A stretch of 64,000 nucleotides of DNA, from positions 124,001 through 188,000 of IMG/VR virus record IMGVR_UViG_3300017987_000001; one strand, 5' to 3'. Shown here piece after piece: positions 21,843 to 33,866 of this stretch. The notes under the pieces were generated by a model. The model had not been told where the DNA came from, did not search any database, and saw only the letters and a list, made by a program, of their open reading frames with translations. The position numbers were made by a program, and so were the translations under genes. The stretch's first letter is position 1, and each line of letters opens with the position of its first letter.

Positions 21843-22412
21843 TTATAGACGAGTGCCGCGAATCAGGCAATATACATCGCGGTTCTTGTCGACGTGGTCG
21901 ATGTCGCTCCAGATGGGGTTGCCTATCCCGAGATCGGACAGGAATGACTCCTCTCGGGCCACGGACTCCTTGTTCATCGTGACGATCGTACCTCCGACAG
22001 CCGTCACGCGCGCCAGCTCTCGTGAGACGGTCTCCCGGTCCTTCGCCGCATTGATGCTCTGCATCGTCATGATGTCGACCACGAGATCGAACGTGCCGTC
22101 GTCGAAGGGCAGCTGGAATGTGTTCAGCGTGACGGGCGTCACGGTCTTGCGGTTGTTGGCCGCTCTGCCCACCCAATCGCCGAAGAGATCCGCTGCCCAC
22201 ACGTGCCCGCACTTCGATGCGATCTGCTGCGTGAACCGCCCGTAGCCACAACCGAAGTCGAGACCGTGCGTGTAGAAGCCCGTGAGCACCTTCGTCAGCT
22301 CGGCCCCAATGATGGTGCCCTGCCGCACGTGATCCTCACCCACGTGGCCCACGCACTTGTCGCCGAAGCGCTTCTTGCGATCGGTCCAGTATTTCAGCGT
22401 GTCGGAGAACAT
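21843..22412 (-). CDS. Class I SAM-dependent methyltransferase
   Basis: GLDFGCGYG motif I; FDLVV motif. Confidence 0.85.
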   Translation of the reverse strand: MFSDTLKYWTDRKKRFGDKCVGHVGEDHVRQGTIIGAELTKVLTGFYTHGLDFGCGYGRFTQQIASKCGHVWAADLFGDWVGRAANNRKTVTPVTLNTFQLPFDDGTFDLVVDIMTMQSINAAKDRETVSRELARVTAVGGTIVTMNKESVAREESFLSDLGIGNPIWSDIDHVDKNRDVYCLIRGTRL

Positions 22413-22413
22413 G

Positions 22414-23343
22414 TTAGTCCTCGGAGATCGTAGGATATACGTACCACTGAATGGTCTTGTGCAGCCCTTCGAGCAACTTCATCTTCGGCTCGAACTTGAG
22501 TGCTTCGCGCATCTTCGTCACGTCGAGCACCTTGCGCGCCGCGCCGTTGGGCTTCTCCGTATCCCAGACGACCTCGCCCTTGTATCCGGTCAGCTTGACG
22601 ATCTTCTCCGTCAGTTCCTTGACCGTCGTGCCGATACCGGTGCCGATGTTGATCGTACCCATCGCCAGCTTCTCGTAGGCGAGGAAGATGGCATCGGCAG
22701 CGTCGTCGACGTACATGAACTCACGGATCGGGCTTCCATCTCCCCAGCACTTCACACTGGGCTTGTCCTCCTGTACGGCTTCAATGAAGCGCGCGATGAG
22801 CGCACCGACGACATGCGAGCGGTAGATCGTGAAGTCGTCGTGCGGGCCGTAGAGATTCGTGAGGATGGCCTGCCCGCCCATGATGCCGTGCTGCTTGCGA
22901 TACTGCCGCTGGCAGACCAGATGGATGCGCTTGGTCATGCCATAACCCTCGACGGACTCATGGCACGGCCCAGCTTCGAGATTCTCCTCGACGAGGTCTT
23001 CCCCCACGTCGCCCGGGTAGGCGCACGCTGAGCCGACAGAGAAGACCTTCTTGATCTTCATGCGCGCGGCAGCCTCCCACACGTTCAGCGCCATGATCGA
23101 GTTGATGTGGAACATATCGGCAGGCTGGTACATGTTGATGCCGATGCCGCCGTAATAGGCTGCCGAGTGAAGGATACCGTCGACGTGCTCGTGCCGCTGC
23201 AGGTAGCGGCAGACACTGTTGAGGTCCATCAGATCCATCTCGGTCGAACGCGGCGCAAGAACCTCGATGTGCTTCTCCTGTCTGAAGCGACGCACGAGCT
23301 TCTGTCCCAGAAAGCCTGACCCGCCAGTGATCAGAATAACCAT
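22414..23343 (-). CDS. fcl: GDP-L-fucose synthase-like epimerase/reductase (extended SDR)
   Basis: TGGSGFLG, SACAYP, YGMTK, NLYGPHD, WGDGSPIREFMYVDD, KPNGAARKVLD. Confidence 0.85.
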   Translation of the reverse strand: MVILITGGSGFLGQKLVRRFRQEKHIEVLAPRSTEMDLMDLNSVCRYLQRHEHVDGILHSAAYYGGIGINMYQPADMFHINSIMALNVWEAAARMKIKKVFSVGSACAYPGDVGEDLVEENLEAGPCHESVEGYGMTKRIHLVCQRQYRKQHGIMGGQAILTNLYGPHDDFTIYRSHVVGALIARFIEAVQEDKPSVKCWGDGSPIREFMYVDDAADAIFLAYEKLAMGTINIGTGIGTTVKELTEKIVKLTGYKGEVVWDTEKPNGAARKVLDVTKMREALKFEPKMKLLEGLHKTIQWYVYPTISED

Positions 23344-23987
23344 CAGTTCCTCCTCGTGAAGATCGCATCACCCCAGAAGTCGGGGGTCGACCCCGGCTGG
23401 AAGTGACGCAGTGTGAATCCCTGCTCGTTCATGTACTTCTCGATCTCGGGCAGCAGCTTCGTGCCTTTGTACAGCGGCTTGAGCCACGCCTCACAGATGA
23501 CCAGCTTGCAGTTCTCCAGCGTCTTGAGCGCTCCAAGCAGCACCTCGTAGTCGTGTCCCTGCACGTCCGTGACCATGACGTCGATAGGCGGCAAATTCAG
23601 CATGTCGATCGCCACTACTGCCACAGGGATCGTCGTATGGGTGCGTATCGACCGAAATCGCTTCTTCGCTATGTCCTTGTCCAGCGGGTGAAGCGACGAG
23701 CATTCGAGCGGGACCGTCGAGTACCACGGCCGAACGCCTGCCCGATCCGACACGATCTTCTGCAGGCATACGACATCCGGGTACTTCTCGCCGATCACCT
23801 CGGCGTTCGACGAGTCGCCCTCGACGCACACGATCTTCGCGTTCCACTGACGGTACGCTTCGATCTCCTGCCCGATACCAGCGCCTACGTGAAGAATCGT
23901 AGGTTCGTCTTCCGGCTGGATCTCTGCCAGCCGCATCCCGATGTCGATCAACGCTGGCACAACTTCCCTTCGATCAGATAGTGCCAT
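23343..23987 (-). CDS. FkbM-family methyltransferase
   Basis: LHVGAGIG, VCVEG, DVMVTDVQGHDYEVLLG, WGDAIF; start uncertain. Confidence 0.85.
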   Translation of the reverse strand: MALSDRREVVPALIDIGMRLAEIQPEDEPTILHVGAGIGQEIEAYRQWNAKIVCVEGDSSNAEVIGEKYPDVVCLQKIVSDRAGVRPWYSTVPLECSSLHPLDKDIAKKRFRSIRTHTTIPVAVVAIDMLNLPPIDVMVTDVQGHDYEVLLGALKTLENCKLVICEAWLKPLYKGTKLLPEIEKYMNEQGFTLRHFQPGSTPDFWGDAIFTRRN

Positions 23988-24736
23988 CCGAAGAGCCTTT
24001 CGAGTGCACGGAACAGGTGATGAGGCATCCACCGCCATGGCAATGCCTGCCTGTACTCGTGCCGGACGTACTCCGGGATGCTCCACGAGAAGATATGTTC
24101 CTTGCGTGCGCTCGTCAGCTCGAAGTGCGGTTCGAGCAGCTTGCGTACCCCGCGCTTCGTGTAGGTGTACGCTACAGGAACGCCGGGCTGGGCCTCGCAC
24201 GTTACGCTGCTGATGAGCATCTGCAGCGACTTGATCGAGTACTTGGCGTACAGCATGAGCTTCAGCACGGTGTCAGGACCGGCGAAGTTCGCCAGCTCCT
24301 GCATCGCACGATCCGGACTCGGCGTGTGGTGAATCACTCCGAACGAGTAGATGAGATCGTACGGATACGGATCGACGGTCCGGCTCAGCTCCTCGCAGTT
24401 CGCCTGCTTGAGCACCACACGATCCTCAAGACCGTACGCCTTCACGCGCTTCTCGGTGAGTTTCAGGCTCTCCGTGGAGAGATCGACGGCAGTCACGTAT
24501 GCACCGGCTCGCGCGAAGCTGACGGTGTCAGTGCCAATGCCGCAGCCGATCTCCAGTACGTAGCGATCCTTCCATCTCGGGAATTCGGCGAACGTGGGAA
24601 TGTGCGGCTCGACGAAGTACTTGCGCTTCTCGACCTGATCGAAGTACTCACGCGTCCCGACGGGGGCCGTGCCGTGTCGGATGTTGCACGGGCGCGCGTC
24701 CCAGAACTTCTGGACCTCCTCGATGGTTGCGGTCAT
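23948..24736 (-). CDS. Class I SAM-dependent methyltransferase
   Basis: Start MTATIEE (ATGA overlap); VLEIGCGIGTD, YDLIYSFGVIHH. Confidence 0.88.
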   Translation of the reverse strand: MTATIEEVQKFWDARPCNIRHGTAPVGTREYFDQVEKRKYFVEPHIPTFAEFPRWKDRYVLEIGCGIGTDTVSFARAGAYVTAVDLSTESLKLTEKRVKAYGLEDRVVLKQANCEELSRTVDPYPYDLIYSFGVIHHTPSPDRAMQELANFAGPDTVLKLMLYAKYSIKSLQMLISSVTCEAQPGVPVAYTYTKRGVRKLLEPHFELTSARKEHIFSWSIPEYVRHEYRQALPWRWMPHHLFRALERLFGWHYLIEGKLCQR

Positions 24737-25512
24737 ACGAACTTCCACCTTCCGCCTGTCGCCCCAGCCTTCTGCTTGCTGGGCTTGTAGATGCCCATGT
24801 TGTGCTTCACGGCCGGATGCTCGTAGATCGAGCGCTTTACCTTCGCACCGAGCTGACGATACGTGTGAGCGGGGTGCAGGATCTTCGGGTTCTTCAGCGT
24901 ACAGATCGGCGTGCGCGAGCGGTTGAGCGCTACCCAATGCAGCCAGTTGTCCCACGCCGCCGCACCCATCACGTAGTCGGGCATGTACTCCAGCATCTGG
25001 AGCGCGAACTTCTTGGTGAATGCGAAGTAGTCACTGCCGCCCGTGCGGTGCGCCTTGATGTCCTTACGCTGCCACAGCGCCTTGTAGCTCGGCTCGTCTA
25101 CGGCTGGCCTATCGAGGTTGATGTCGTAGCGAATACCAACGACGAACGGATTGGGGTTCTTGAACAGCAGCGATCCGAGCTTCGGGTGGAACTTCGGGCA
25201 TACGATGATGTCGGAGTTGATGAGGCACATGTACTGCGTCGTCGTGTGCTCCGCAGCGACAGCGATCAGCGAGCGCAGCATCGGATGCGTGGTTTCCAGC
25301 CCCTGATCGCACGCGAGCTTGACCTCGGGGATGTACTTGAAGCCGTGCTTCTCGCAGAACTCCTTCACGCCCTTATCGCGGCCGAGCGCGAGAATCGGGT
25401 TCGTATCCATCTTCTCGCGCTTCCACGAGTAGACGGCACTGCGCTGACCAATGTCGTCGGTCGCATCGCCGATCTCCTTGAAGGTCGTGAAGAAGGTGAC
25501 GTTACTTTCCAT
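24733..25512 (-). CDS. Putative GT-A fold glycosyltransferase
   Basis: CLINSDII (DxD-like), SDYFAF, WDNW; cluster context. Confidence 0.55.
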   Translation of the reverse strand: MESNVTFFTTFKEIGDATDDIGQRSAVYSWKREKMDTNPILALGRDKGVKEFCEKHGFKYIPEVKLACDQGLETTHPMLRSLIAVAAEHTTTQYMCLINSDIIVCPKFHPKLGSLLFKNPNPFVVGIRYDINLDRPAVDEPSYKALWQRKDIKAHRTGGSDYFAFTKKFALQMLEYMPDYVMGAAAWDNWLHWVALNRSRTPICTLKNPKILHPAHTYRQLGAKVKRSIYEHPAVKHNMGIYKPSKQKAGATGGRWKFV

Positions 25513-26419
25513 AGACTTCCCTCAGCCTCTCGTCTGCCAGTCGAAGGTAGCGATTGTTCTGGAGATACTCCGTCAGCTGCTTGCCGAGCTTGTGGCGAGG
25601 GAGCACCTTGATGACGGTGGCGTTCGCGGCGCGAGAGCGCTTCTTCTGCGTGTCGCCGAGAACGTTGGTCTGCTCGAAGAAGAACTTCCACCCATCGGAG
25701 AACCGAATGCCGAGCTTGTTGCACAGGTTCTGCAGGAAGGCATCCGGGTCGCGACAGAAGTGCTCGTAGCGCACGATCGGGATCTTGTGCTGGATGAGCT
25801 TGTCGACGTAGACGAGATACGCCTTCGCGTACCGGTTGGCCTTACTGAACTGACGATCGGACCAGCCGTGGAATTTCGCAAAAGATAGTGCACAGTCGAC
25901 CGCGTTGCGTACATAGGCTACTGTACGCGGACCGTTCCCGAGCAGCACGTGTGTGCGAAGATCCTTGTGGGTTCGCCCACCATTGAAGTCGGTGGTATAG
26001 AAGCTGTTGATCGTCCAGTCGCGTACGACTACCGCGCGGTTCTCTCGCTCCGCCCACACGCGATCGAGATGATCGACGCAGGAGAGCCATGGCGTGCCCT
26101 TGGGGATATCGACATTGAACCAGTTGCGCGCCTGCCAGTGCGCGGAGTGAATGCCTGTGTGGATACTCGGATGAACCTCTGAGAGCACGGCATGACCCAT
26201 CGCAAGCAGGCACCTGTTCAGCACCGTAGCGCCGGTGCGCGCCCACGCGTAGATGAGCGGCACGTTGACACGAATATGCGGTTCGGGAGCCTTGAGAACG
26301 GTAGGCGCTCTCGGCTTGGCCTTTCGCCTGCGCTCGTCGAGCGCACGCTGCCGCGCCCGCGAAATTGCGGCTGCGCGGGGATTCTGGTTTGCTCTATCGC
26401 CTTTGTATGCCCGGCTCAT
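25502..26419 (-). CDS. Sulfotransferase-family protein
   Basis: ARTGAT (5'-PSB-like), VRNAVDCALS (3'-PB-like), IVRYEHFCRDP...LGI. Confidence 0.75.
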   Translation of the reverse strand: MSRAYKGDRANQNPRAAAISRARQRALDERRRKAKPRAPTVLKAPEPHIRVNVPLIYAWARTGATVLNRCLLAMGHAVLSEVHPSIHTGIHSAHWQARNWFNVDIPKGTPWLSCVDHLDRVWAERENRAVVVRDWTINSFYTTDFNGGRTHKDLRTHVLLGNGPRTVAYVRNAVDCALSFAKFHGWSDRQFSKANRYAKAYLVYVDKLIQHKIPIVRYEHFCRDPDAFLQNLCNKLGIRFSDGWKFFFEQTNVLGDTQKKRSRAANATVIKVLPRHKLGKQLTEYLQNNRYLRLADERLREVYGK

Positions 26420-26422
26420 GAC

Positions 26423-27073
26423 TCACCGCTTCAGAAGGTAGTTCTCGCCGTCGTAGACCTCGGGGTCAGAATAGCCACGTGCGGCCAACCACTTCAGCGC
26501 ATCCTCGGCACTCTGGCCCCGCTTCCCCAACGCATGATTCAGCTCGACCATGACGTAGGGATTGAGATGCTCCAGTGTCGACTCGGCGCCCTGCAGCACC
26601 TCAAAGTCATATGAATCCACATCGATCTTGATTGCATCAACGTGATGGAGATTCTCGCGATCAATGAAGTCGTCGATCGTGACGAACGTATACTCTTGGA
26701 ACTCGGGCGCCTGTCCCCAGACCTTGAAGATGCCATCCTCGATCTTGCCGCTCTTCGCACCCATCGCGCAGCGCCAGCAGTCGACATTGTCGCCGCACTG
26801 ATCCTTCGTCTGATTGTGCTTCACGTTCTCCATGAGCATAGCGAACGTCTCGGTCGGCTCGATGGCCAGCACGTGACCCTTCGGTGCGAGCTGGGAGAAG
26901 AGGAGCGTGTAGTAGCCGATGTTCGCACCCACATCGATGATGGTCCAGTCTTCCTTCACGTGCTGGACGAACCACTTCTTCGTCTGCATCTCGCAGTTCG
27001 GGTAATAGTTCGCGAACTGTGGATAGAATGCGATCAGCTCGATGGGGTCTCTGCCGGGAATGTTCGTGTGCAT
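26423..27073 (-). CDS. FkbM-family methyltransferase
   Basis: Start MHTNIP (TAATG overlap); IIDVGANIGYY, AIEP, IKIDVDSYDFEVLQG. Confidence 0.9.
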   Translation of the reverse strand: MHTNIPGRDPIELIAFYPQFANYYPNCEMQTKKWFVQHVKEDWTIIDVGANIGYYTLLFSQLAPKGHVLAIEPTETFAMLMENVKHNQTKDQCGDNVDCWRCAMGAKSGKIEDGIFKVWGQAPEFQEYTFVTIDDFIDRENLHHVDAIKIDVDSYDFEVLQGAESTLEHLNPYVMVELNHALGKRGQSAEDALKWLAARGYSDPEVYDGENYLLKR

Positions 27074-28116
27074 TATGATGGCCTCGATGGTCCGGGTCGG
27101 AGGGTGCGAGCAATCGGAGGCGGCTGCGTGCGCTGCCTCTTGGGGCTTGGCTTCAATGCACGCTGAGGCGTGGGCGGCTGGATACGCTTGCGCGGCGTCA
27201 CCGCCTTCGAGACCCCCACAGGGGTCGGATGCTTCGGAAGCGGCGGGATCTCGCGCATCTTCGGTGCGGGTACGAGCATGTCGAAGCCCATAACCTTCGT
27301 CGTCTGCACGTGTCCCAGCCCCCAGCGTCGCCGATCGTTGGTATACGGCATCCACAGCTCGGGGTTGTATTCCGGCCCCCACGGTGGATCCTGCGGGAGC
27401 CGCTTGTGATTCACATACGACGACTTATGCCACAGATGGTAGCAGCTGCCCGTCGCTACGATCTTGCCCTTCAGCTTGATCACCTGAGAGCACAGCCGAT
27501 GGTCCTTGTGGATTTTCGCCCAGCGGATCGTCTCATCGTAACCGAGCAACGCCTTCCAGTAGGATACGAGCGCCATCTGGAAGTCCCCCGCGCCCTGCGT
27601 GTACGCAGGAGGCACCGACTTCCAGTTCTTCACGACGATGTCCGGACTGGTCAGCTCCTCCGCGCGCTCGTAGACACGGTCGGACTTGATATCGGTCCGA
27701 TGCACTGTGCGATAGAGCGTGCGAGGCTGGCAGCCCTGCCATCCGGCAAGCAATTCCACGGTATCGGGGCCGAAGAGAATATCAGCGTTCGTGCACAGCG
27801 CAACCTTCGCAGTGCTGCGCCTGAGCGCGACGTTCTTGGCGAAGAACTCCATGATGACCATCTTCGGATTGTCGCACACCATCGAGTGCCACTCGGGGCC
27901 AACGACGTACGCCTTGGAGTTCGGAACCTCGTTGATGTAGCGATGAGCCAGCGTGCCGAGCTTGTCGTGCGGCGAGTTCCACTCGACGAACGTGAACTGG
28001 AAGTCCACGTCCGCCTCAGCGAGTGCTCGCGCATTGAACTGTGAGGCATAGATCAACCGACCGCCGAAGTCACCGGTGTGGTTGTCCGCCCGCCCGACAA
28101 CGATGATCTCAAGCAT
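27073..28116 (-). CDS. Putative GT2-like glycosyltransferase with basic Pro-rich tail
   Basis: IIVVGR.DN, FVEWN, CTNADILF, AGDFQM, HLWH. Confidence 0.6.
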   Translation of the reverse strand: MLEIIVVGRADNHTGDFGGRLIYASQFNARALAEADVDFQFTFVEWNSPHDKLGTLAHRYINEVPNSKAYVVGPEWHSMVCDNPKMVIMEFFAKNVALRRSTAKVALCTNADILFGPDTVELLAGWQGCQPRTLYRTVHRTDIKSDRVYERAEELTSPDIVVKNWKSVPPAYTQGAGDFQMALVSYWKALLGYDETIRWAKIHKDHRLCSQVIKLKGKIVATGSCYHLWHKSSYVNHKRLPQDPPWGPEYNPELWMPYTNDRRRWGLGHVQTTKVMGFDMLVPAPKMREIPPLPKHPTPVGVSKAVTPRKRIQPPTPQRALKPSPKRQRTQPPPIARTLRPGPSRPS

Positions 28117-28780
28117 CTTTGTTCAGTACCAGTTCCAGCCACTCCATCTCCGCTTCGGGGAGCGGCATCTGCGTGCCACGGCGCTTCACGAGTGTGATAC
28201 CGGGGATGCTACGCTTCGGCACGTACTTCATCTTCGGCTGATTCCACTGCGTCCCAAACGGATAACGATCAAAGCCCATCACGTCAAACTGATCCGTCGA
28301 GCGAATCTCCTCGACAAGCTTACGTACGCCTGCCATCTGCGTGCTGTCGTGCATGATCCAGAAGTCGGTCAGCTTCTGCGCTCCCAGCCAGTCAGCCTTC
28401 GAGCCTTCGTAGGAGTGATCGCCGTCGATGAAGCACAGTCCGAAGCGGTGGCCATCCTCCGTAAGCTCCTGCAATGCATTCTGACTGTAGTCATTCATGA
28501 TGTGAAGAAACTTCTCCGGGGCGTGCTGAACTTCCCAATTCTTCTTTATGTAGGGAATACACGCCGGATTCTTCTCGATCGTGACGATGTGCACGTTCTT
28601 CGTCGTGTTGGTCGCCGATGCGCCCTTCCAGAGCGACAGCGTGCCCAGCCCCATATTCGCACCGATCTCAAGGATGCGCTTCGGCCGCAGGAGTGCTGCG
28701 ATGCCGTAGAGGAAGTAGTACTCCTCGATGAGGCACGACTCCGAGAACGTCAGTCCTTCACACTTAATGGCTTGCAGCAT
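28109..28780 (-). CDS. Class I SAM-dependent methyltransferase (Methyltransf_24-like)
   Basis: ILEIGANMG, FIDGDHSYEG, IMHD. Confidence 0.85.
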   Translation of the reverse strand: MLQAIKCEGLTFSESCLIEEYYFLYGIAALLRPKRILEIGANMGLGTLSLWKGASATNTTKNVHIVTIEKNPACIPYIKKNWEVQHAPEKFLHIMNDYSQNALQELTEDGHRFGLCFIDGDHSYEGSKADWLGAQKLTDFWIMHDSTQMAGVRKLVEEIRSTDQFDVMGFDRYPFGTQWNQPKMKYVPKRSIPGITLVKRRGTQMPLPEAEMEWLELVLNKDA

Positions 28781-30062
28781 GTGTACGCTCCTTCAGCAGG
28801 CTGTCGACCTCGTCCCAGAAGTGTTGGTACAGCCAGTGATCGCACCGTTGATTGAACCACTGGAGCCCGCGCAGCGCTATCGGCTTGTACTTGTCGAACC
28901 GGCGCACGAGTTCGGTGAGCTGCGGTATCAGTCGCTCCTTGACCGGACGAGCGAGCTGCACGTAGTTGTTGTCGGGTTTCAGCCCAACGAGCTTACACTC
29001 AGGCACCGTGGGAGCCACCATCAGTGAGCATGCACTCGGGATCTCCGAGTACTTGTTCACGAGGTAACCGAACTTGTCCTGCCCGAACACACAGATCTTC
29101 GCTTGCGACAGATGCTTCGACCACAGCAGGAGGGGTGGAGCAGCGTACTTCGATGCGCTGATGTTCTCCTTCCCCACCTTGGGCGCTGGCGTGCCCCACA
29201 GCTTCAGCTTGAACGGTACCTTCGTATTGCGCAGCAGGTTCCAGATTGCCGTGCGCTCGGGGTACACCGGCCCAGCCACGCCGATCACCATCACGTCGTA
29301 CGGTCGCTTCTTGAACGTCGTATTCTGGTTCGCCCAGAACGGATCGGCGAGGAACGGCGTGAAGATGACCCTCGTCTGCTTGGCGATGCTGAACGCGCCG
29401 TTCCAGATCGATGGATAGGGCGTGAGCACGGCCGCAGGCTTCTTGTCGAAGAGCTGCTGCGCGCGCTTCTGGATCGCAGGCGGATGATGATCGTGACAGT
29501 ACAGGAAGATCGGCGGGTTGCCCTTCTGCGTAAGCAGTGGCGTCTGTCCGTGCACCGTCATGATGATGAAGTCGTAGTCCTTCAGATTGTAGCGGTCGAT
29601 GTCGCCGAACCCGCAGAAGGTCGTCTGGTACGGACTCATCCGCTTGCGCCAGAGCATGAGACCGGTCTTCGGACCGTGACGCACGAGCAGATGCGGCGCT
29701 CCGGCCACGAACAGACACTTGCGCCCGGGCAGGTCGGCGTGCTTCCCCAGTGCGAAATTGTAGTTGCGACGGAGATGCAGCCACTCGGGCTTCAGTACGT
29801 TCGCACACTGCTGCTGCATCTGTGCCTTGTGCGCCGGGTGCCCGCATGAATGCGGCTTCCACTGATTCCTCCCCGAGATGCGTGACTGCCACTCCATGAG
29901 CGTACACAGCTCGCAGTTGGTGATCTCGCGCGGTCCGCCGTAGGTCTCCATATGCTCGCGCGTGATAGTGCATAGCGCGAGATCGTTCCCCCATGCGACC
30001 GTGGAGAACTCCTCGCGCTGGAACCACGCCTTGCGAGCAAGCTGAAAGACCCGGGACGCCAT
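28764..30062 (-). CDS. Putative GT-B glycosyltransferase (CgeB-like C-terminal domain)
   Basis: YDVMVIG...YPER, LSQAKICV, KYSEIPSACSLMV; cluster context. Confidence 0.6.
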   Translation of the reverse strand: MASRVFQLARKAWFQREEFSTVAWGNDLALCTITREHMETYGGPREITNCELCTLMEWQSRISGRNQWKPHSCGHPAHKAQMQQQCANVLKPEWLHLRRNYNFALGKHADLPGRKCLFVAGAPHLLVRHGPKTGLMLWRKRMSPYQTTFCGFGDIDRYNLKDYDFIIMTVHGQTPLLTQKGNPPIFLYCHDHHPPAIQKRAQQLFDKKPAAVLTPYPSIWNGAFSIAKQTRVIFTPFLADPFWANQNTTFKKRPYDVMVIGVAGPVYPERTAIWNLLRNTKVPFKLKLWGTPAPKVGKENISASKYAAPPLLLWSKHLSQAKICVFGQDKFGYLVNKYSEIPSACSLMVAPTVPECKLVGLKPDNNYVQLARPVKERLIPQLTELVRRFDKYKPIALRGLQWFNQRCDHWLYQHFWDEVDSLLKERTHAASH

Positions 30063-30991
30063 CAGTCAATCCTCCACGGGTTGTGAATGACGATGTTCTT
30101 GGCAATCTGACCCACTTCGAGCACGCCTTGGTTCAGATCGACGAGCGACTTGAATCCGGTGTCCGTGAACTTCGAGTAGTCAACCGCATAGTTGCGGCAG
30201 TCAGCGTCCTTGCCGATCGACGCCTCGTGAATGTACATCGGGAAGAGCTTGTCGATAGCATTCGCAGCTTCACGCTTCGTGAGGTTGAGATGATCCGCTC
30301 CCACGTTGAAGATGTGCCCGCCTACGCTATCGAACTTGTTGATGGCGTGGAGGTAGCTATCCGCAGCGTCACGAACGTGGAGGAACGTGCGCCTGTGGCC
30401 GCCCTCGTAGATCACGAGATAGCGCTTGCGCACGGCGTGGAACACGAAGTTGTTGATCAGCAGGTCGAAGCGCATGCACGGGCTACCGCCGAAGATGGTA
30501 GCGAAGCGAAGGCATGCAGCACCCGCGTCCTGACAGATCTTCTCCGCCTCGGCCTTCGTATGCCCATAGTGGCTGAGCGGGCTGATCGGCGTCGTTTCGT
30601 CACACACGCCATCCACCATGCCGTACGTGCTACCGGTGGAGGCATACACGAAGACCTGATTCTTCGACACGTGCTTGGCCACGTTGCGGCTGCCAACTAC
30701 GTTGGTCTCAGTAGCAAGCTGCGGGTCAGCGGCGCACGCCGGGAAGCCCACAATCGCGGCGAGATGAAGCACGACATCGTTCTGACTGACGAGCTTGCCT
30801 ACCAGCTCCTCGTCACGGACGTCGCCCTTCACGCAGTCGAACACGCGACTGATGGTCGCATGCCCCAGCAGCGAGTGGAATCCATAGTCTAGCTTGTCGA
30901 GTACGGTGACGCGATGTCCCGCATCGAGAAGACGCCCGCAGAGCACTGATCCGACATAGCCTGCTCCACCCGTAACGAGAACGTTAGCCAT
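30062..30991 (-). CDS. NAD-dependent nucleotide-sugar epimerase/dehydratase
   Basis: TGGAGYVG, HLAAIVG, ASTGSTYG, YGHTK. Confidence 0.9.
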   Translation of the reverse strand: MANVLVTGGAGYVGSVLCGRLLDAGHRVTVLDKLDYGFHSLLGHATISRVFDCVKGDVRDEELVGKLVSQNDVVLHLAAIVGFPACAADPQLATETNVVGSRNVAKHVSKNQVFVYASTGSTYGMVDGVCDETTPISPLSHYGHTKAEAEKICQDAGAACLRFATIFGGSPCMRFDLLINNFVFHAVRKRYLVIYEGGHRRTFLHVRDAADSYLHAINKFDSVGGHIFNVGADHLNLTKREAANAIDKLFPMYIHEASIGKDADCRNYAVDYSKFTDTGFKSLVDLNQGVLEVGQIAKNIVIHNPWRID

Positions 30992-32297
30992 TGGTATGCA
31001 ATCCGTTTCTGTAAAGGTCGACTACACGCTTGCCAGAGAGCTTGTAGTCGAGCACCTTCGCGAAGACCTCGGGCTGCAGCCGCATGTTGACGATGATCGC
31101 ATCCGAGGTCTCAAGTAGATCATCGACATTCGCCGTAAGATTGTGCATCAGTTCCGCAGCTTCTGCATCGCCACGAACCATAAGATCGAGCGTGACGTCG
31201 TCGGTGTCCGAGAAGATCGGATCCCAGAAATGGATCCCCACGTCATCGCCCTCGGCAAGCGCGAAGAACTCCACAGCGAGCGAGTGCCGAGCGTCGGGGT
31301 ATCCGGGGCGATAACCCATGCCGATCATGCCGAGCGTGTTAACGTCATCGTGATCGGCAGCTTCCCGGTAGATGCGCTGGATGCGGTCGCGGTTGTGGAG
31401 ATTCGCCAGTGCGAGCGTCGGGCACCGATGCGAGATGAGGTTCTCCAGCAAGATGCCGCGCAGGATGGCGCTGTCCTTCGGCAAGCACGTGCCACTGAAC
31501 GGAGGACCGGCCTTCATGTGGGAGAGTGTGAGCAGTCGTCCGGCGCTGCTCTCGCAGAATGTCAGATGCGTGACGATCGTGGGGTCGACGCCGAAGTGGT
31601 CGCACAGATCACCCAGTTCGTTGGCGAAGTTGATCTTGAGACACATGTACGTGTTGTGCATCAGCTTGACGAACTCGGCCTCTTCGTAGCTACAACGACT
31701 CTGCTCCGTCTCATTCCATGTCACCGAGCGAATGAACTTGTCGAGCTTGTCGTTCGGCCTGCCGATCTCGCGCTGCCACGACTTCAGCGGTCCCATACCG
31801 AGCACGATCTTGGGCGGATGCAGGAAGTCGGTCACGCCAGCGCCCGCGCGCAGGAACACGGGCTGATACACGAACTGTGCCTCGCAGTCCTTGAGCGCGG
31901 GAAGCACGTGCTTCGCAATCGTGCCCGGAAAGACCGTCGAGCCGAGGATGAGGATCTGCCCCTTCTTCAGGATGGGCGCCAGATCCTTCAGGAGGCCCGT
32001 CAGAGCGCTGAAATCACAGACCTCGTACTCTGACCCCTCGGGAACGATTGAGGGCGTCTGAACGGCTATGAAGATGATCTCCGCATCAGCGACGTACGCG
32101 AGATCATTGGTGATGTAGGCGCGCTTGTAGTCGATGCCATTCCAGCAGCTTTCCTCGCCCTCGAACAGCTTCCCGCTCTCCCACGCTTCGAGCTTCGTGC
32201 GGTCCTTATCGATGACGATCAGGTCATGCCCTGCGAGCAGCGCTGCACCGCCCCAGCTGATTCCCATGTTGCCCGCACCGATGAGTGCTACCTGCAT
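30984..32297 (-). CDS. UDP-glucose/GDP-mannose dehydrogenase-family protein
   Basis: Start MQVALIGAGNMG; AVQTPS, STVFPGT, KLMHN..KINFANE, catalytic GTCLPKD. Confidence 0.88.
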   Translation of the reverse strand: MQVALIGAGNMGISWGGAALLAGHDLIVIDKDRTKLEAWESGKLFEGEESCWNGIDYKRAYITNDLAYVADAEIIFIAVQTPSIVPEGSEYEVCDFSALTGLLKDLAPILKKGQILILGSTVFPGTIAKHVLPALKDCEAQFVYQPVFLRAGAGVTDFLHPPKIVLGMGPLKSWQREIGRPNDKLDKFIRSVTWNETEQSRCSYEEAEFVKLMHNTYMCLKINFANELGDLCDHFGVDPTIVTHLTFCESSAGRLLTLSHMKAGPPFSGTCLPKDSAILRGILLENLISHRCPTLALANLHNRDRIQRIYREAADHDDVNTLGMIGMGYRPGYPDARHSLAVEFFALAEGDDVGIHFWDPIFSDTDDVTLDLMVRGDAEAAELMHNLTANVDDLLETSDAIIVNMRLQPEVFAKVLDYKLSGKRVVDLYRNGLHTNG

Positions 32298-32298
32298 G

Positions 32299-32985
32299 CT
32301 ATCTCCTCGCGATCTTGAATGGCTTGCGCTTGCCCTGCAGTACCATGCGCAGGCTCTGCTTGTAGCCGAGATGGGTGGACATATCGAGTACGCCAAGCCA
32401 CGGCCTCGGCTTCATCTTCAGGAACTTCTGATCGTAGTACCAGTCGGACATCGACTTCTGGTCCACGCGCCCGGTGACCTTCGGGATGCCGAACTTCTCA
32501 GCGAAGTCACGTCGAACAACCCAGCACGGGCCGTTCGACGTGTTCTTCAACCGCACCTCATAGTCTCCGATCTGAACGGTGGAGCGCGTGGGGTGCTTGC
32601 GCTCCTGCAGTCGATCGGTATGCATCGCTGCAGCTACCACATCCTCGCGCTCGTCGAGCACGAGCTTGCCCGCCTTCAGCCACTCGGGCTTGAGAATCAT
32701 GTCGTCATCAACCCACGACACGTACTTCGCGTCGCTCGCTTCTACCTGCTTCCACATCTGGCGCAGCGCGTACGACTTCTGCCACTGCGGAACGTTGCGC
32801 TGATTCTTGATGATCTGTTGCACGCGTCCAACAGTCTTCAGCCACTTGTACGTGCCGTCGATCGAGCCGTTGTCGATGACGAGCAGGTGGGCATCTCCGA
32901 TGTCGGATGCGAGCAGCGACTCCACGCACTGCTTCAGGAAGTCGAGTCGATCACGCGTGATCACCGTGATGATTGTGTCGGGCAT
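32299..32985 (-). CDS. Glycosyltransferase family 2
   Basis: LKQCVESL, IDNGSIDGT, WVDDD. Confidence 0.88.
   Translation of the reverse strand: MPDTIITVITRDRLDFLKQCVESLLASDIGDAHLLVIDNGSIDGTYKWLKTVGRVQQIIKNQRNVPQWQKSYALRQMWKQVEASDAKYVSWVDDDMILKPEWLKAGKLVLDEREDVVAAAMHTDRLQERKHPTRSTVQIGDYEVRLKNTSNGPCWVVRRDFAEKFGIPKVTGRVDQKSMSDWYYDQKFLKMKPRPWLGVLDMSTHLGYKQSLRMVLQGKRKPFKIARR
32814..32835. promoter_or_regulatory. 22 bp palindrome copy 3, degenerate (TCTGTTGCACGCGTCCAACAGT)
   Basis: Core match with compensatory CTG/CAG flanks; intragenic. Confidence 0.5.
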
Positions 32986-33866
32986 CAGAGTCGATCCTTT
33001 TTGTAAACGCTGTAGAGCAGCTTAACGATGGTCCCCGTGATCTGTGCAGGCGGGAGCACCACGCCCTTCTTGTGCAGGATCACTTCCACGGGCGTAGCGA
33101 ACGGATTCCAGTCCTTCTCGTACCGAACTTTGTTGCCGCCGCCGATCAGGCTCTGGAAGCGGCTCGTCGCCCACACGACGTGAGGCACGCGGCAGAGCGA
33201 CGCCAGATGCATCGGACCGCTCGACGGGCCGATCACGAGCTGCGAGCTGGCAATGAGGTTCACCAACTCGTTCAGTGGCATGCCGCGCTTGTCCGTCACG
33301 CCTATGGGCAGGAGTGAAGCGTGCTTGGTACCGATCGCCACAATCTCTTCACGCTTTGCGATCTTCTTCGTGACGATCTGCTCGATCAGTCGGTCCCACA
33401 TCTTCTGCGGATAGTTATCCCCGGCGAATGGAGCAGCGCATCGACGATTGCGCGCGTGAATGACGACCTTCCACGGTGTCGGGATCAGGCCGCCATATGG
33501 CACGAATGACTGATCGCGGAGCTTTCGTCGAGGAGGACGGCGTACCCAGCTCTCCAGCCTAATCACTTCGTATCCGAGCTTCTGGTACTTGTGCTCGTAG
33601 GCGCTCAGCTCGCCACGAACGCGCGCGACCTCGGCGGGGTTGTCGACCTTGCCCTTACGTGGACGGTGCCCGTCACGATCGCAGAGGATGACATGGGGAA
33701 TGAAGGTGTGACTGAAGTCACGGTAGAGCGGCCAGAGCCCTTCCGTGCTGCAGATGATTACGTTTCGGGGATCAATACCCTGAGCCTGCTTGCGTACGAA
33801 GCCCTGCCACTCCATCAACTCCCAGCCGAACTCCGATACGCACGGTCCAGCGATAAGCGCCTTCAT
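32985..33866 (-). CDS. GT9 (heptosyltransferase)-like glycosyltransferase
   Basis: IGPSSGPMHLASLCRVPHVV resembles the GT9 DSGPMHLA motif. Confidence 0.7.
   Translation of the reverse strand: MKALIAGPCVSEFGWELMEWQGFVRKQAQGIDPRNVIICSTEGLWPLYRDFSHTFIPHVILCDRDGHRPRKGKVDNPAEVARVRGELSAYEHKYQKLGYEVIRLESWVRRPPRRKLRDQSFVPYGGLIPTPWKVVIHARNRRCAAPFAGDNYPQKMWDRLIEQIVTKKIAKREEIVAIGTKHASLLPIGVTDKRGMPLNELVNLIASSQLVIGPSSGPMHLASLCRVPHVVWATSRFQSLIGGGNKVRYEKDWNPFATPVEVILHKKGVVLPPAQITGTIVKLLYSVYKKDRL

What the first reader, a model, noticed from the sequence alone, without database searches (positions are those of the whole stretch)
21843..33866. 12 kb glycan synthesis and decoration cluster wedged into the structural module
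Seen: 13 contiguous genes comprising three nucleotide-sugar enzymes (Fcl-like, SDR epimerase, NDP-sugar dehydrogenase), about five glycosyltransferases (GT2, GT9-like, CgeB-like, two GT-A-like), five methyltransferases including two FkbM, and a sulfotransferase-like gene. No flippase, polymerase or export gene was recognised. Inference: a methylated, possibly sulfated, glycan built in the cytoplasm on virion proteins. DNA hypermodification or host-surface remodelling are alternatives. Such complete pathways are familiar from giant eukaryotic viruses and much less so from tailed phages.
Basis: partly seen in the sequence, partly recalled or inferred. Interest (0 to 1): 0.72.

Follow-up and report, generated by a model that had tools for sequence, protein, structure and literature searches.

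The report
Portal-anchored glycan operon in jumbo phage
An uncultured 208-kb marine-sediment phage carries an intact 14-gene operon of soluble enzymes that should build a methylated, probably sulfated sugar chain inside the infected cell; related phages swap this gene set for others at the same spot next to the portal gene, but what the sugar chain is attached to is still unknown.

Summary
Window 21843-33866 (minus strand) is one tightly packed operon of 14 intact genes, not 13. It has 3 nucleotide-sugar enzymes, 5 glycosyltransferases, 5 methyltransferases and 1 sulfotransferase. All are predicted soluble. The complete 207,857-bp phage genome has no ORF with more than 4 predicted TM segments, so no flippase, polymerase or exporter.

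"Structural module" is inexact. The operon starts 37 nt after an intein-containing portal gene but is followed by a DNA ligase and the phage RNA polymerase. The capsid and tail block lies about 35 kb or more away.

Across this uncultured lineage a GT9-like transferase sits just downstream of the portal, usually followed by a methyltransferase. Here and in three metagenomic contigs a further gene cassette follows the GT9-like gene. Other relatives carry different cassettes, one with APS kinase and two sulfotransferases. The cassette core also occurs on two contigs with different flanking genes.

The thymidylate-synthase family (source of hydroxymethylated bases) and C5 DNA methylase are absent, which argues against DNA glycosylation.

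Best reading (about 0.4): a variable glycan placed on virion proteins. Main rival: remodelling of host envelope glycans through host export. This is a new variant of a known kind, since large phage glycan clusters are already described in cyanophages.

The parts
33903..36677 (-). Portal protein gene (924 aa) immediately upstream of the operon; the conserved anchor of the locus
   Evidence: Residues 431-806 are about 30% identical to Salmonella phage Arash gp204 'portal protein' and to a Vibrio phage D69 ORF. Orthologues at 82% identity occur in L009 and L011.
35394..36338 (-). Intein inside the portal gene (residues about 114-428)
   Evidence: Intein_splicing and TIGR01445 hits. The intein-free orthologue in L011 joins residues 1-113 to 429-924. 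It resembles RNR inteins of actinophages.
32985..33866 (-). GT9-like GT-B glycosyltransferase (293 aa); first gene of the operon and the lineage-conserved member; candidate initiating transferase
   Evidence: PF01075 scores 20 bits against a cut-off of 22. AF2 pLDDT 93.7. Foldseek: WaaF 3.6e-8, WaaC, 3tov, TibC. Invariant GPSSGPMHL motif. Follows the portal in 16 related loci.
32299..32985 (-). GT2 (GT-A) glycosyltransferase, 228 aa, DDD motif at residues 93-95
   Evidence: PF00535 6.5e-13. DXD motif. Orthologues in L009, L003, L011 and L023.
30984..32297 (-). NDP-hexose 6-dehydrogenase (437 aa from the ATG at 32297); makes a uronic acid
   Evidence: UDPG_MGDP_dh N-terminal and central domains. 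TIGR03026 scores 172.8 bits, cut-off 189.8. PDB UDP-Glc DH 3e-30 and GDP-Man 6-DH 1e-27. Catalytic Cys in a GTCLPKD context.
30062..30991 (-). SDR closest to PDB 6VO6/6VO8, probably a GDP-sugar C4-dehydrogenase type (309 aa)
   Evidence: phmmer 1e-68, 235 bits over residues 3-297. Always adjacent to the dehydrogenase in L003, L004, L009 and L023.
28764..30062 (-). CgeB-like GT-B glycosyltransferase (432 aa)
   Evidence: ESM Atlas feature score 0.96 and TM 0.60-0.67 to Glyco_trans_1_2 clusters. Orthologues at 39-54% identity.
28109..28780 (-). Methyltransf_24 / O-methyltransferase-type MT (223 aa)
   Evidence: PF13578 1.8e-9 and PF01596. Orthologues in L003, L004 and L009.
27073..28116 (-). GT-A fold glycosyltransferase (347 aa)
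   Evidence: No Pfam hit. Atlas TM 0.76 to GT clusters, with GT2/Glyco_transf_7C relatives. Orthologues at 47-65% identity.
26423..27073 (-). FkbM/RfbT-type methyltransferase (216 aa from the ATG at 27073)
   Evidence: PF05050 5.9e-19 and PF05575 5e-9. Start refined from orthologue alignment.
25502..26419 (-). PAPS-type sulfotransferase (305 aa; the first ~50 residues may not be translated)
   Evidence: PF13469 scores 27.0 bits at a cut-off of 27. 529 homologues. 34 of 40 hit Sulfotransfer_3. The family profile hits CurM ST at 3.4e-8. R-[ST]-G-x-T and R..D...S motifs conserved.
24733..25512 (-). GT-A-like glycosyltransferase (259 aa)
   Evidence: Atlas TM 0.87 to a viral cluster, with GT2-like relatives. 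Homologues at 41-76% identity only in metagenomes.
23948..24736 (-). Class I SAM methyltransferase (262 aa from the ATG at 24736)
   Evidence: Methyltransf_25/12/11. phrog_22502 2.7e-52. Orthologues at 54-73% identity.
23343..23951 (-). Second FkbM methyltransferase (about 200 aa; start 23936-23960 uncertain); absent from relatives
   Evidence: PF05050 3.5e-10. phrog_8156. No orthologue in L003, L004 or L009.
22414..23343 (-). Fcl-type GDP-4-keto-sugar 3,5-epimerase/4-reductase (309 aa)
   Evidence: E. coli GDP-fucose synthase 5.7e-55. Equivalents of Ser107/Tyr136/Lys140 and Cys109/His179 are retained (with PMC7949155). NF047922 scores 241.7 bits, below the cut-off of 500.
21843..22412 (-). 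Methyltransf_11 MT (189 aa); last gene of the operon; follows the GT9-like gene in nine relatives, directly in seven
   Evidence: PF08241 5.9e-15. Orthologues follow the GT9-like gene in L009, L015, L016, L030, L031, L034, L035 and L076; L025 has an MT11-type gene by Pfam. Nearest PDB: NodS 2.1e-5.
19843..21816 (-). LigD_N phosphoesterase + ATP-dependent DNA ligase fusion; conserved downstream boundary of the island
   Evidence: PF13298 and phrog_114. 52-53% identical orthologues downstream of MT11 in L015, L016 and L035.

Best explanation
The region is a phage-encoded cytoplasmic pathway for a complex oligosaccharide carrying methyl and probably sulfate groups. It needs no lipid-carrier or export steps of its own.

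Proposed steps:
1. Three enzymes tailor nucleotide sugars taken from the host. A 6-dehydrogenase makes a uronic acid. An SDR closest to PDB 6VO6 probably oxidises a GDP-manno-type sugar at C4. A true Fcl-type enzyme epimerises at C3/C5 and reduces C4 to give an L-configured sugar.
2. Five soluble, strongly basic glycosyltransferases build the chain. The GT9-like enzyme is the lineage-conserved first step and may use a nucleotide-heptose.
3. Five SAM methyltransferases and one PAPS sulfotransferase decorate the chain, with PAPS supplied by the host.

Evolution: the lineage keeps a GT9-like transferase just downstream of the portal gene, usually with a methyltransferase after it. This phage has that pair split by a 12-gene cassette.

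Most likely acceptor: the phage's own virion proteins, for example acidic Ser-run or collagen-like fibres. This would give a variable, serotype-like glycan coat.

Shown: gene content, folds, retained catalytic motifs, solubility, absence of export and of the two tested enzyme families that prepare bases for sugar attachment, synteny, and cassette replacement. Inferred: sugar identities, order of action, acceptor and biological role.
For: Pathway and intactness:
- There are 14 overlapping or abutting co-directional ORFs with composition equal to the flanks.

Cytoplasmic location:
- No TM segment occurs in any cluster protein.
- No ORF with more than 4 predicted TM segments occurs in the complete direct-terminal-repeat genome.

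Against a DNA target:
- No thymidylate-synthase-family or C5 DNA methylase gene is present, and both positive controls fired.

Anchor pair:
- The GT9-like gene follows the portal, on the same strand, in 16 related loci whose portals are 32-83% identical to this one. These are L009, L011, L012, L015 and L016 and 11 IMG/VR loci.
- An MT11-type methyltransferase follows the GT9-like gene in nine of them, directly in seven.
- Fused MT+GT9 proteins exist.
- MT11's nearest solved relative is NodS; the second, 3bus, I recall as the sugar methyltransferase RebM.
- One relative has a TylF-type sugar O-methyltransferase instead.

Variability typical of exposed glycans:
- In L009 the portal is 83% identical but the enzymes only 54-73%.
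- In L011 the portal is 82% identical but the cassette differs: GT2-like genes, NodZ-like, two Sulfotransfer_2, APS kinase and radical SAM.
- The core DH-SDR-CgeB-MT24-GT-A-GT-A259 also occurs in L003 and L004, whose flanking genes differ; in L004 it lies about 3 kb upstream of a Peptidase_S77 prohead protease gene.

Candidate acceptors: acidic (pI 4.0-4.5) Ser-run and collagen-like virion-region proteins.

Precedent, from my own knowledge: mycobacteriophage virion O-glycosylation (Freeman et al. 2023, cited in PMC12619734).
Against: - No direct evidence for any acceptor.
- The capsid homologue (31% identical to Arash gp226) has no Ser/Thr-rich terminal tail.
- The portal is an isolated structural gene here. 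The other flank is DNA ligase and RNA polymerase.
- Relatives place anti-defence sponge genes (Lockin, Sequestin) in the same variable region, so it may simply be an accessory-gene hotspot.
- Characterised GT9 enzymes act mostly on LPS core. A bacterial homologue sits beside a Wza-type exporter and a sulfotransferase.
- In 69 other IMG/VR loci the GT9-like gene is not detectably next to a portal homologue.
- No expression data.
- That 6VO6 is Cj1427 rests on my memory. The tool gives only the deposited name.
Confidence: 0.4

Rival explanations
1. Host envelope remodelling. The soluble phage transferases work at the cytoplasmic face of the inner membrane on nascent host LPS core or undecaprenyl-linked O-antigen or capsule intermediates. 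The host's own MsbA or ABC transporter then exports the altered, methyl- or sulfate-capped glycan, for example to mask receptors against superinfection or grazers.
For: - The GT9 fold's characterised members are LPS heptosyltransferases.
- A bacterial homologue of the GT9-like gene lies near Poly_export (Wza), a sulfotransferase, an epimerase and PAP2.
- FkbM/RfbT-type methyltransferases are O-antigen terminal modifiers (PF05575 hit; role from my own knowledge).
- All 5 GTs and the sulfotransferase have pI 9.5-10.3 against a genome median of 6.4, as peripheral membrane GTs often do.
- The cyanophage literature interprets similar clusters this way (PMC12801897).
Against: - No initiating phosphoglycosyltransferase, flippase, ABC transporter, polymerase or ligase exists anywhere in the phage.
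- The cassette occurs on contigs with different flanking genes, which would each need a compatible host acceptor.
- A GT9-like gene fixed in position downstream of the portal in a presumably lytic jumbo phage is not expected for a host-serotype converter. Known converters are temperate and membrane-bound (my own knowledge).
- Basic pI is equally explained by an acidic uronate- or sulfate-bearing product or an acidic protein acceptor.
Confidence: 0.25
2. Another cytoplasmic acceptor. The operon makes a free or lipid- or small-molecule-linked methylated, sulfated oligosaccharide, or it glycosylates host or non-structural phage proteins. The role would be metabolic or counter-defence rather than a virion coat.
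For: - Relatives embed anti-defence sponges (Lockin, Sequestin, BubE) in the same island.
- MT11's nearest solved relative is NodS; by my recollection NodS and 3bus (RebM) decorate a free oligosaccharide and a natural-product glycoside.
- Relatives add radical SAM, TylF and NodZ-like genes typical of natural-product or Nod-factor-type chemistry.
Against: - No aglycone-forming, acyl-transfer or scaffold genes were recognised in the window cluster.
- Five GTs plus tailored nucleotide sugars is more than known effector-type protein glycosylation uses (my own knowledge).
- No precedent is known to me for phage-made free sulfated oligosaccharides.
Confidence: 0.12
3. DNA hypermodification. The transferases attach and elaborate sugars on modified bases of the phage genome to evade restriction.
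For: - The operon is adjacent to a DNA ligase.
- The transferases are basic.
- The region is an accessory and counter-defence hotspot in relatives.
- Phage GTs are known to put diverse glycans on 5hmC (Pyle et al. 2024, cited in PMC12619734).
Against: - No thymidylate-synthase-family (dCMP/dUMP hydroxymethylase) gene and no C5 cytosine methylase occurs in the complete genome, and both positive controls fired.
- Tet/JBP was not found, but that control was silent.
- Uronic-acid, Fcl-type and sulfation chemistry with five methyltransferases has no DNA precedent known to me.
Confidence: 0.08
4. A recently captured host island that is decaying or functionless.
For: The nucleotide-sugar enzymes score below NCBIfam equivalog cut-offs.
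Against: - All 14 ORFs are intact with catalytic motifs.
- GC 0.56-0.61 and GC3 0.75-0.84 are similar to the flanking phage genes (GC 0.57-0.62, GC3 0.70-0.77).
- Orthologous cassettes in the same order occur in other phage-like contigs at 39-73% identity.
- The nearest bacterial homologues of GT-A259 are at most 32% identical.
Confidence: 0.02

Closest known systems
Mycobacteriophage virion O-glycosylation (Che8, Corndog, Myrna; Freeman et al. 2023, Cell Host Microbe; recalled, paper not held)
   Same: Phage-encoded soluble glycosyltransferases, with methyltransferases in some phages. They act in the cytoplasm with no export genes. The proposed product is a glycan shield on virions.
   Different: - Those systems have 1-4 GTs, attach glycans to Ser/Thr-rich C-terminal tails of capsid and tail-tube subunits, and use host nucleotide sugars.
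- Here there are 14 genes including nucleotide-sugar tailoring and sulfation, a GT9-like anchor, and no such tail on the capsid homologue.
- No sequence relatives were found in cultured phages for the three tested genes.
'LPS / cell-wall synthesis and modification' clusters of large T4-like cyanophages (P-SSM2, S-SCSM1, S-SCSM2R; PMC12801897)
   Same: Phages over 200 kb with many GTs (up to 13) plus NDP-sugar epimerases in clusters. Function is unproven. Host-surface, DNA and virion targets are all debated.
   Different: - Different phage lineage: this one encodes its own multisubunit RNA polymerase.
- No tblastn match of three cluster genes, and no megablast match of the whole cluster, to any cultured phage.
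- Here methylation is heavy (5 MTs), a sulfotransferase is present, and the locus is portal-anchored with cassette replacement.
Chlorovirus and mimivirus glycan machineries (PBCV-1 capsid N-glycans with methylated sugars; mimivirus fibril glycans); from my own knowledge
   Same: Virus-encoded GDP-fucose-type and UDP-Glc-dehydrogenase-type enzymes plus cytoplasmic GTs and sugar methyltransferases. They build methylated glycans on virion proteins independently of host export. Clusters vary between lineages.
   Different: Those are eukaryotic giant viruses, and homology was not tested. Sulfation and a GT9-like enzyme are not part of those systems as far as I know.
Campylobacter jejuni capsular heptose modification pathway (Cj1427 C4-dehydrogenase, Fcl-like C4-reductases MlghC/DdahC, O-methyltransferases; PMC10680097, PMC7949155)
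   Same: A 6VO6-like SDR (235 bits) is paired with an Fcl-family enzyme and methyltransferases, and no 4,6-dehydratase is present. This suggests inversion of a GDP-manno sugar without 6-deoxygenation.
   Different: - The phage Fcl keeps the Cys/His epimerase dyad that MlghC and DdahC lack (PMC7949155).
- No separate cupin epimerase was recognised, and no GDP-heptose synthesis genes are in this phage.
- The C. jejuni product is exported capsule.
- The identity of 6VO6 as Cj1427 is from memory.
GT9 heptosyltransferases (WaaC, WaaF) and the protein Ser-heptosyltransferase TibC
   Same: Fold match (E 3.6e-8 to 1e-5, TM about 0.5-0.6) and a GPSSGPMHL nucleotide-sugar motif resembling the GT9 signature.
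   Different: - The phage protein is shorter (293 aa against about 320-400 aa).
- Only 11-17% identical.
- Pfam score is below the cut-off (20 against 22 bits).
- Glu rather than Asp at the N-terminal catalytic position.
- Donor and acceptor are unknown.

Membership tests
CAZy GT9 / Pfam PF01075 heptosyltransferases | GT-B two-Rossmann fold most similar to WaaC and WaaF | tested here: met
   AF2 model pLDDT 93.7, pTM 0.90. The top 29 Foldseek PDB hits are all GT9 or TibC, best E 3.6e-8, TM 0.60.
CAZy GT9 / Pfam PF01075 heptosyltransferases | Sequence score above the family's curated threshold | tested here: not met
   PF01075 scores 20.0 bits against a cut-off of 22 for the window protein. Many homologues carry a precomputed PF01075 hit. 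The family profile against WaaC gives only E 0.08.
CAZy GT9 / Pfam PF01075 heptosyltransferases | ADP-heptose donor and lipid A-core acceptor | not testable with these tools
   Only indirect evidence: in other IMG/VR lineages the gene is linked to PfkB kinase and NTP_transferase genes.
PAPS-dependent sulfotransferases (Sulfotransfer_1/3) | 5'-phosphosulfate-binding loop and 3'-phosphate-binding motif | tested here: met
   R61-[ST]62-G63-x-T65 and R171..D175..S179 are invariant or nearly so in 40 homologues. The window has ARTGAT and VRNAVDCALS.
PAPS-dependent sulfotransferases (Sulfotransfer_1/3) | Family-level sequence membership | tested here: met
   PF13469 scores 27.0 bits at a cut-off of 27. 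34 of 40 homologues hit Sulfotransfer_3 and 20 of 40 hit Sulfotransfer_1. The family profile hits only sulfotransferases in the PDB, best CurM ST 3.4e-8.
PAPS-dependent sulfotransferases (Sulfotransfer_1/3) | A source of PAPS | tested here: not met
   No APS kinase in the phage genome, so it must rely on the host. Relative L011 does encode an APS kinase beside its sulfotransferases.
GDP-L-fucose synthase (Fcl/GFS/GMER) | Ser-Tyr-Lys reductase triad plus Cys/His epimerisation dyad | tested here: met
   The alignment to E. coli GFS (1bsv) shows equivalents of S107, Y136, K140, C109 and H179. Residue roles are from PMC7949155.
GDP-L-fucose synthase (Fcl/GFS/GMER) | Equivalog-level score and a partner GDP-mannose 4,6-dehydratase | tested here: not met
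   NF047922 scores 241.7 bits against a cut-off of 500. Only the two cluster SDRs match GDP_Man_Dehyd in the genome, and neither is a clear Gmd.
Mycobacteriophage-type virion glycosylation | Ser/Thr-rich C-terminal acceptor tail on the major capsid or tail-tube protein | tested here: not met
   The capsid homologue (genome 108756-109703) has no such tail. The tail-tube homologue was not identified. Ser-run and collagen-like proteins exist elsewhere.
Mycobacteriophage-type virion glycosylation | Glycan detectable on virion proteins | not testable with these tools
   Uncultured phage known only from metagenomes.
Bacterial O-antigen / capsule loci (Wzx/Wzy or ABC-transporter dependent) | Initiating phosphoglycosyltransferase, flippase or ABC transporter, polymerase or ligase | tested here: not met
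   No TM segment in cluster proteins. No ORF with more than 4 predicted TM segments in 207,857 bp.
Phage DNA glycosylation systems (T-even type, 5hmC/5hmU based, or TET based) | dCMP/dUMP hydroxymethylase (thymidylate synthase family), or C5-methylase plus TET | tested here: not met
   PF00303 has no match (control fired in 10 of 14 genomes). PF00145 has no match (control fired in 9 of 14). PF12851 has no match, but its control was silent, so that test is inconclusive.
Cyanophage LPS/CWSM gene clusters | Homology to the genes of P-SSM2, S-SCSM1 or other cultured phages | tested here: not met
   Megablast of the 12 kb found nothing. tblastn of the CgeB-like, GT-A259 and GT9-like proteins against 50,697 phage records found no match.

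The most novel reading that the evidence does not exclude
A lineage of uncultured marine-sediment jumbo phages keeps a serotype-like locus just downstream of its portal gene. A conserved GT9-like, possibly heptosyl, transferase, usually with a sugar methyltransferase, primes a virion protein such as an acidic Ser-run or collagen-like fibre. Interchangeable cassettes then extend it into lineage-specific methylated and sulfated glycans. These cassettes move between unrelated phages. This would be a phage analogue of O-antigen locus diversification, and the first sulfated virion glycan in a tailed phage.
Probability: 0.27. Interest if true: 0.8.

Novelty: new variant of a known kind. Interest (0 to 1): 0.55.

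Why it matters
- **Glycan coats beyond mycobacteriophages.** If the glycan sits on virions, elaborate methylated or sulfated coats would extend from mycobacteriophages to environmental jumbo phages. Such coats could affect adsorption, stability, grazing or recognition.
- **A testable system.** The locus has a fixed anchor (portal, then the GT9-like gene, usually with a methyltransferase) and swappable cassettes. This offers a natural experiment on how phages diversify surface chemistry.
- **Enzyme resource.** The operon is compact and fully soluble. It includes a 6VO6-type C4-dehydrogenase, a bona fide Fcl, five sugar-type methyltransferases and a sulfotransferase, all useful for glycoengineering.
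- **Limit on annotation.** Large glycan operons in phage genomes cannot be assigned to DNA, virion or host surface from gene content alone.

Tried and rejected
Searches that found nothing:
- Megablast of the 12 kb against 50,697 phage records: no match.
- tblastn of the CgeB-like, GT-A259 and GT9-like proteins against the same records: no match.
- The search for related loci in IMG/VR with the portal extein and with the GT-A259 alignment: nothing.
- The L003 record is not held, so its other contig end could not be read.

Annotation attempts with little yield:
- PHROGs on 20 flanking or structural-region ORFs was almost empty, because the lineage is poorly covered. The capsid was therefore located through Arash gp226.
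- Pfam on the first ORF of L004, tested as a possible portal, gave no hit.

Tests that were negative or uninformative:
- Tet/JBP search: no hit, but the control genomes were silent, so this is uninformative.
- A mycobacteriophage-style Ser/Thr tail on the capsid was looked for and not found.
- Intrinsic terminators and sigma-70 promoters inside the operon are not above shuffled expectation.
- No served RNA run holds the sequence. Laying four marine-sediment metatranscriptome runs gave only scraps under 90% identity, mostly on the portal gene, so there is no evidence on expression of the cluster.

Papers not held:
- Freeman 2023 (PMC10527164) and Huddleston 2020 (PMC7509852) are not held. A text search for '6VO6' gave nothing relevant. 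That 6VO6/6VO8 is Cj1427 therefore rests on my memory plus the deposited molecule name.

Not run:
- Complex prediction was not run. I make no claim that specific proteins bind, and enzyme-acceptor contacts are transient.

Rejected:
- The 'decayed host island' reading is rejected (see rivals).

Full report
**Setting**

The window is bases 124001-188000 of a single 207,857-bp IMG/VR virus record with direct terminal repeats, rated 100% complete. GC is about 0.60 and nearly all genes lie on the minus strand. The genome encodes a fused beta/beta'-like multisubunit RNA polymerase (1832 aa) and a second polymerase piece.

The nearest cultured relatives are only about 30% identical in these proteins. 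They are Vibrio phages D69/D181/D148 and Salmonella phage Arash (Caudoviricetes). The exact sequence occurs in four sediment or seawater metagenome runs from three studies. This is therefore an uncultured jumbo tailed phage from marine or sediment habitats.

**The observation**

With starts refined from orthologue alignments and Shine-Dalgarno context, window 21843-33866 holds 14 minus-strand genes. They overlap by 1-17 nt or lie at most 3 nt apart. No terminator or promoter signal inside the region exceeds shuffled expectation.

In transcription order the genes are:

| # | Gene | Length (aa) |
|---|---|---|
| 1 | GT9-like | 293 |
| 2 | GT2 | 228 |
| 3 | NDP-hexose 6-dehydrogenase | 437 |
| 4 | SDR | 309 |
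| 5 | CgeB-like GT-B | 432 |
| 6 | Methyltransf_24 | 223 |
| 7 | GT-A | 347 |
| 8 | FkbM/RfbT methyltransferase | 216 |
| 9 | Sulfotransferase | 305 |
| 10 | GT-A-like | 259 |
| 11 | Class I methyltransferase | 262 |
| 12 | Second FkbM | about 200 |
| 13 | Fcl-like SDR | 309 |
| 14 | Methyltransf_11 (MT11) | 189 |

The sum is 14 genes, not 13.

**Enzyme detail**

- *Fcl-like protein.* It matches E. coli GDP-fucose synthase at 5.7e-55. It retains the Ser/Tyr/Lys triad and the Cys/His epimerisation dyad, whose roles are given in PMC7949155. It should therefore be a true 3,5-epimerase/4-reductase rather than a reductase-only enzyme like MlghC or DdahC. It scores below the NCBIfam equivalog cut-off.
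- *No obvious 4,6-dehydratase.* Only the two cluster SDRs match GDP_Man_Dehyd in the genome, and neither is a clear GDP-mannose 4,6-dehydratase.
- *Second SDR.* It matches PDB 6VO6/6VO8 at 1e-68 and 235 bits over its whole length. From memory this is C. jejuni Cj1427, the GDP-heptose C4-dehydrogenase described in PMC10680097. I could not verify the PDB-to-protein link.
- *Dehydrogenase.* It is equally close to UDP-glucose and GDP-mannose 6-dehydrogenases and keeps the catalytic Cys. In L003, L004, L009 and L023/L024 it is always directly followed by the 6VO6-like SDR.
- *Sulfotransferase.* It sits at the Pfam threshold (27.0 bits against 27). Its family of 529 homologues is clearly sulfotransferase: 34 of 40 hit Sulfotransfer_3, and the profile hits CurM ST at 3.4e-8. 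Both PAPS-binding motifs are conserved. The phage has no APS kinase, but relative L011 does.
- *GT9-like protein.* It gave a confident model (pLDDT 93.7). Its 29 best PDB matches are WaaF, WaaC, a GT9 protein and TibC. An invariant GPSSGPMHL motif resembles the GT9 nucleotide-sugar signature as I recall it.
- *MT11.* Its nearest solved relative is NodS (2.1e-5); the second is 3bus (3.5e-4), which I recall as the sugar methyltransferase RebM.

**Where the chemistry happens**

None of the 14 proteins has a hydrophobic segment of TM strength. In the whole genome no ORF has more than 4 predicted TM segments. There is therefore no flippase, polymerase, ABC permease, ligase or polytopic phosphoglycosyltransferase. 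The pathway is cytoplasmic, or at most peripheral to the membrane.

All five GTs and the sulfotransferase have pI 9.5-10.3. The genome median is 6.4, and only 23% of its proteins reach 9.5 or more. The acceptor or working surface is therefore anionic. That fits a uronate- or sulfate-bearing glycan, an acidic protein, a membrane or DNA, so it does not discriminate between the models.

**Context**

The operon begins 37 nt after a 924-aa portal gene. That gene is interrupted by an intein at residues about 114-428. The intein-free orthologue in L011 joins the two exteins at 82% identity.

Downstream lie a LigD_N-ligase fusion, two unknown ORFs and the RNA polymerase. In Arash and D69 the portal is followed by one small ORF and then directly by the polymerase. 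The capsid homologue and the run of large structural genes lie at genome 46-125 kb, mostly outside the window. "Wedged into the structural module" is thus only true in the sense of "placed right after the portal gene".

**Relatives**

*Same lineage.* Sixteen related loci have a GT9-like gene downstream of a portal homologue on the same strand. Their portals are 32-83% identical to this one, and up to three short genes (in L028 a GIY-YIG endonuclease gene) can lie between.

| Locus | Portal identity | Content after the portal |
|---|---|---|
| L009 | 83% | NAD-synthase-like gene, then the same cassette in the same order at 54-73% identity; only the second FkbM is missing |
| L023 / L024 | 73-75% | GT9-like, GT2, DH, SDR and CgeB-like, the same order as here, as far as the contigs reach |
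| L011 | 82% | Keeps GT9-like and GT2 (45% and 41%), then a different set: GT2-like genes, NodZ-like, two Sulfotransfer_2, methyltransferases, APS kinase, radical SAM, and a Lockin sponge gene |
| L025 | 64% | GT9-like, then two minus-strand ORFs, then a TylF-type sugar O-methyltransferase and an MT11-type gene |
| L015, L016, L030, L031, L034, L035, L076 | 47-60% | Minimal form: GT9-like followed by MT11, directly in six and about 4 kb downstream in L031; ligase follows in L015, L016 and L035 |
| L012 | 32% | GT9-like, a 239-aa gene and a Methyltransf_24-containing gene |

The backbone in the minimal relatives is portal, GT9-like, MT11, ligase. In this phage 12 genes sit between the two members of that pair. 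Fused MT+GT9 proteins also exist.

*Other contigs.* The core of the cassette is DH, SDR, CgeB-like, MT24, GT-A, optional FkbM, and GT-A259. It also occurs in L003 and L004, whose flanking genes differ. L004 additionally has the class I MT and the Fcl. In L004 the cassette lies about 3 kb upstream of a Peptidase_S77 prohead protease gene.

*More broadly.* At least 85 IMG/VR contigs encode relatives of the GT9-like protein. In the 69 of the 80 loci examined that show no homologue of this portal, the gene is often duplicated in tandem. It is embedded among SDR, DegT aminotransferase, sugar dehydrogenase, NTP-transferase, PfkB kinase, B12-radical-SAM and FkbM genes.

Phage glycan clusters built around this short GT9-like enzyme are therefore common in environmental viromes. 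I found none in cultured phages.

**Weighing the targets**

*DNA.* The complete genome lacks the thymidylate-synthase family that supplies 5hmC and 5hmU. It also lacks C5 methylases, which a TET route would need. Both searches had working controls. DNA glycosylation by known routes is unlikely.

*Host surface.* This cannot be excluded. GT9 enzymes classically act on LPS core at the inner face of the membrane. A bacterial homologue sits beside a Wza-type exporter and a sulfotransferase. RfbT-type methyltransferases cap O-antigens. Host MsbA or ABC transporters could export a modified product. Against it, the phage supplies no initiation or export step, and the cassette occurs on contigs with different flanking genes.

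*Virion proteins.* This is my preferred reading, for these reasons:
- the pathway is purely cytoplasmic;
- the GT9-like gene is deeply conserved in position, co-oriented and often nearly abutting the portal gene;
- the enzymes diverge much faster than the portal, and whole cassettes are replaced between close relatives, which is the pattern of exposed, diversifying glycans;
- virion glycosylation has a precedent in mycobacteriophages.

Candidate acceptors are acidic Ser-run and collagen-like proteins in the structural region. The capsid homologue itself lacks a Ser/Thr tail.

The weakness is real. There is no direct evidence for any acceptor, and relatives place anti-defence sponges (Lockin, Sequestin; bioRxiv 10.1101/2025.07.12.664507) in the same region. 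The site may therefore be a general accessory hotspot. I put the virion-coat model at about 0.4, host envelope remodelling at 0.25, another cytoplasmic acceptor at 0.12 and DNA at 0.08.

**Novelty and verdict**

Large glycan-gene clusters in phages over 200 kb are already described. Cyanomyoviruses carry up to 22 such genes (PMC12801897), other jumbo lineages have core GTs (PMC12619734), and virion glycosylation is established in mycobacteriophages.

What is new here:
- the particular architecture, a portal-anchored GT9-like gene and methyltransferase split by a 12-gene cassette;
- alternative cassettes at the same site in close relatives;
- the same cassette core on contigs with different flanking genes;
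- the chemistry implied, namely a 6VO6-type C4-dehydrogenase plus a true Fcl without a dehydratase, five methyltransferases and sulfation.

I rate it a new variant of a known kind, of moderate-to-good interest. It offers a clear, cheap experimental route to identify the acceptor.

Noticed in passing
window 35394-36338 (-), inside portal gene 33903-36677: The portal gene carries an intein of about 315 aa. Intein-free orthologues exist (L011, 616 aa). Other relatives have even longer portals (L028 1336 aa, L030 980 aa), which suggests repeated intein or homing-element invasion of this gene.
   Followed up: partly
window 11427-16925 (-) and 3628-5490 (-): A fused beta/beta'-like multisubunit RNA polymerase ORF of 1832 aa plus a second polymerase piece. 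The same arrangement is seen in Salmonella phage Arash (gp206, gp216) and Vibrio phage D69 at about 31% identity.
   Followed up: partly
window 19843-21816 (-): A LigD_N 3'-phosphoesterase fused to an ATP-dependent DNA ligase. In relative L015 the homologous module is further fused to an SNF2 helicase (1210 aa).
   Followed up: no
L011 9097-9414; L015 8824-9354: Relatives carry anti-defence sponge genes by Pfam (Lockin in L011; BubE and Sequestin in L015) inside the same variable region downstream of the portal. The site may therefore also act as an accessory and counter-defence hotspot.
   Followed up: partly
genome 104538-107534 (-), outside the window (G000:C1): A 998-aa acidic (pI 4.05) protein with a duplicated N-terminal domain, a Ser-run linker and long collagen-like G-X-Y repeats. 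It lies just downstream of the capsid gene block and is a candidate glycan acceptor.
   Followed up: partly
window 55716-56450 (-): A possible sixth glycosyltransferase outside the operon. It is a 244-aa ORF with sub-threshold GT2 hits (17-19 bits).
   Followed up: partly
window 38107-38598 (-): A 163-aa ORF with 4 predicted TM segments, the most membrane-rich ORF in the whole genome. It is possibly holin-like.
   Followed up: no
window 21843-33866, all 14 proteins: Charge split within the operon. The 5 GTs and the sulfotransferase have pI 9.5-10.3. The 3 nucleotide-sugar enzymes and 4 of the 5 methyltransferases have pI 4.8-6.6. The genome median is 6.4.
   Followed up: yes
L009 911-1663; L003 3444-4178: Relatives have an NAD-synthase-like (N-type ATP pyrophosphatase) gene inside the cassette, absent here. 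It could amidate the uronic acid made by the neighbouring dehydrogenase.
   Followed up: no
L023-L102 (IMG/VR): In 43 of 80 viral loci the short GT9-like gene is present in two or more copies, usually in tandem. A frequent upstream order is DegT, B12-radical SAM, SDR, NTP-transferase, and an NDP-sugar dehydrogenase often follows. This is a widespread, apparently undescribed phage glycan-cluster type.
   Followed up: partly
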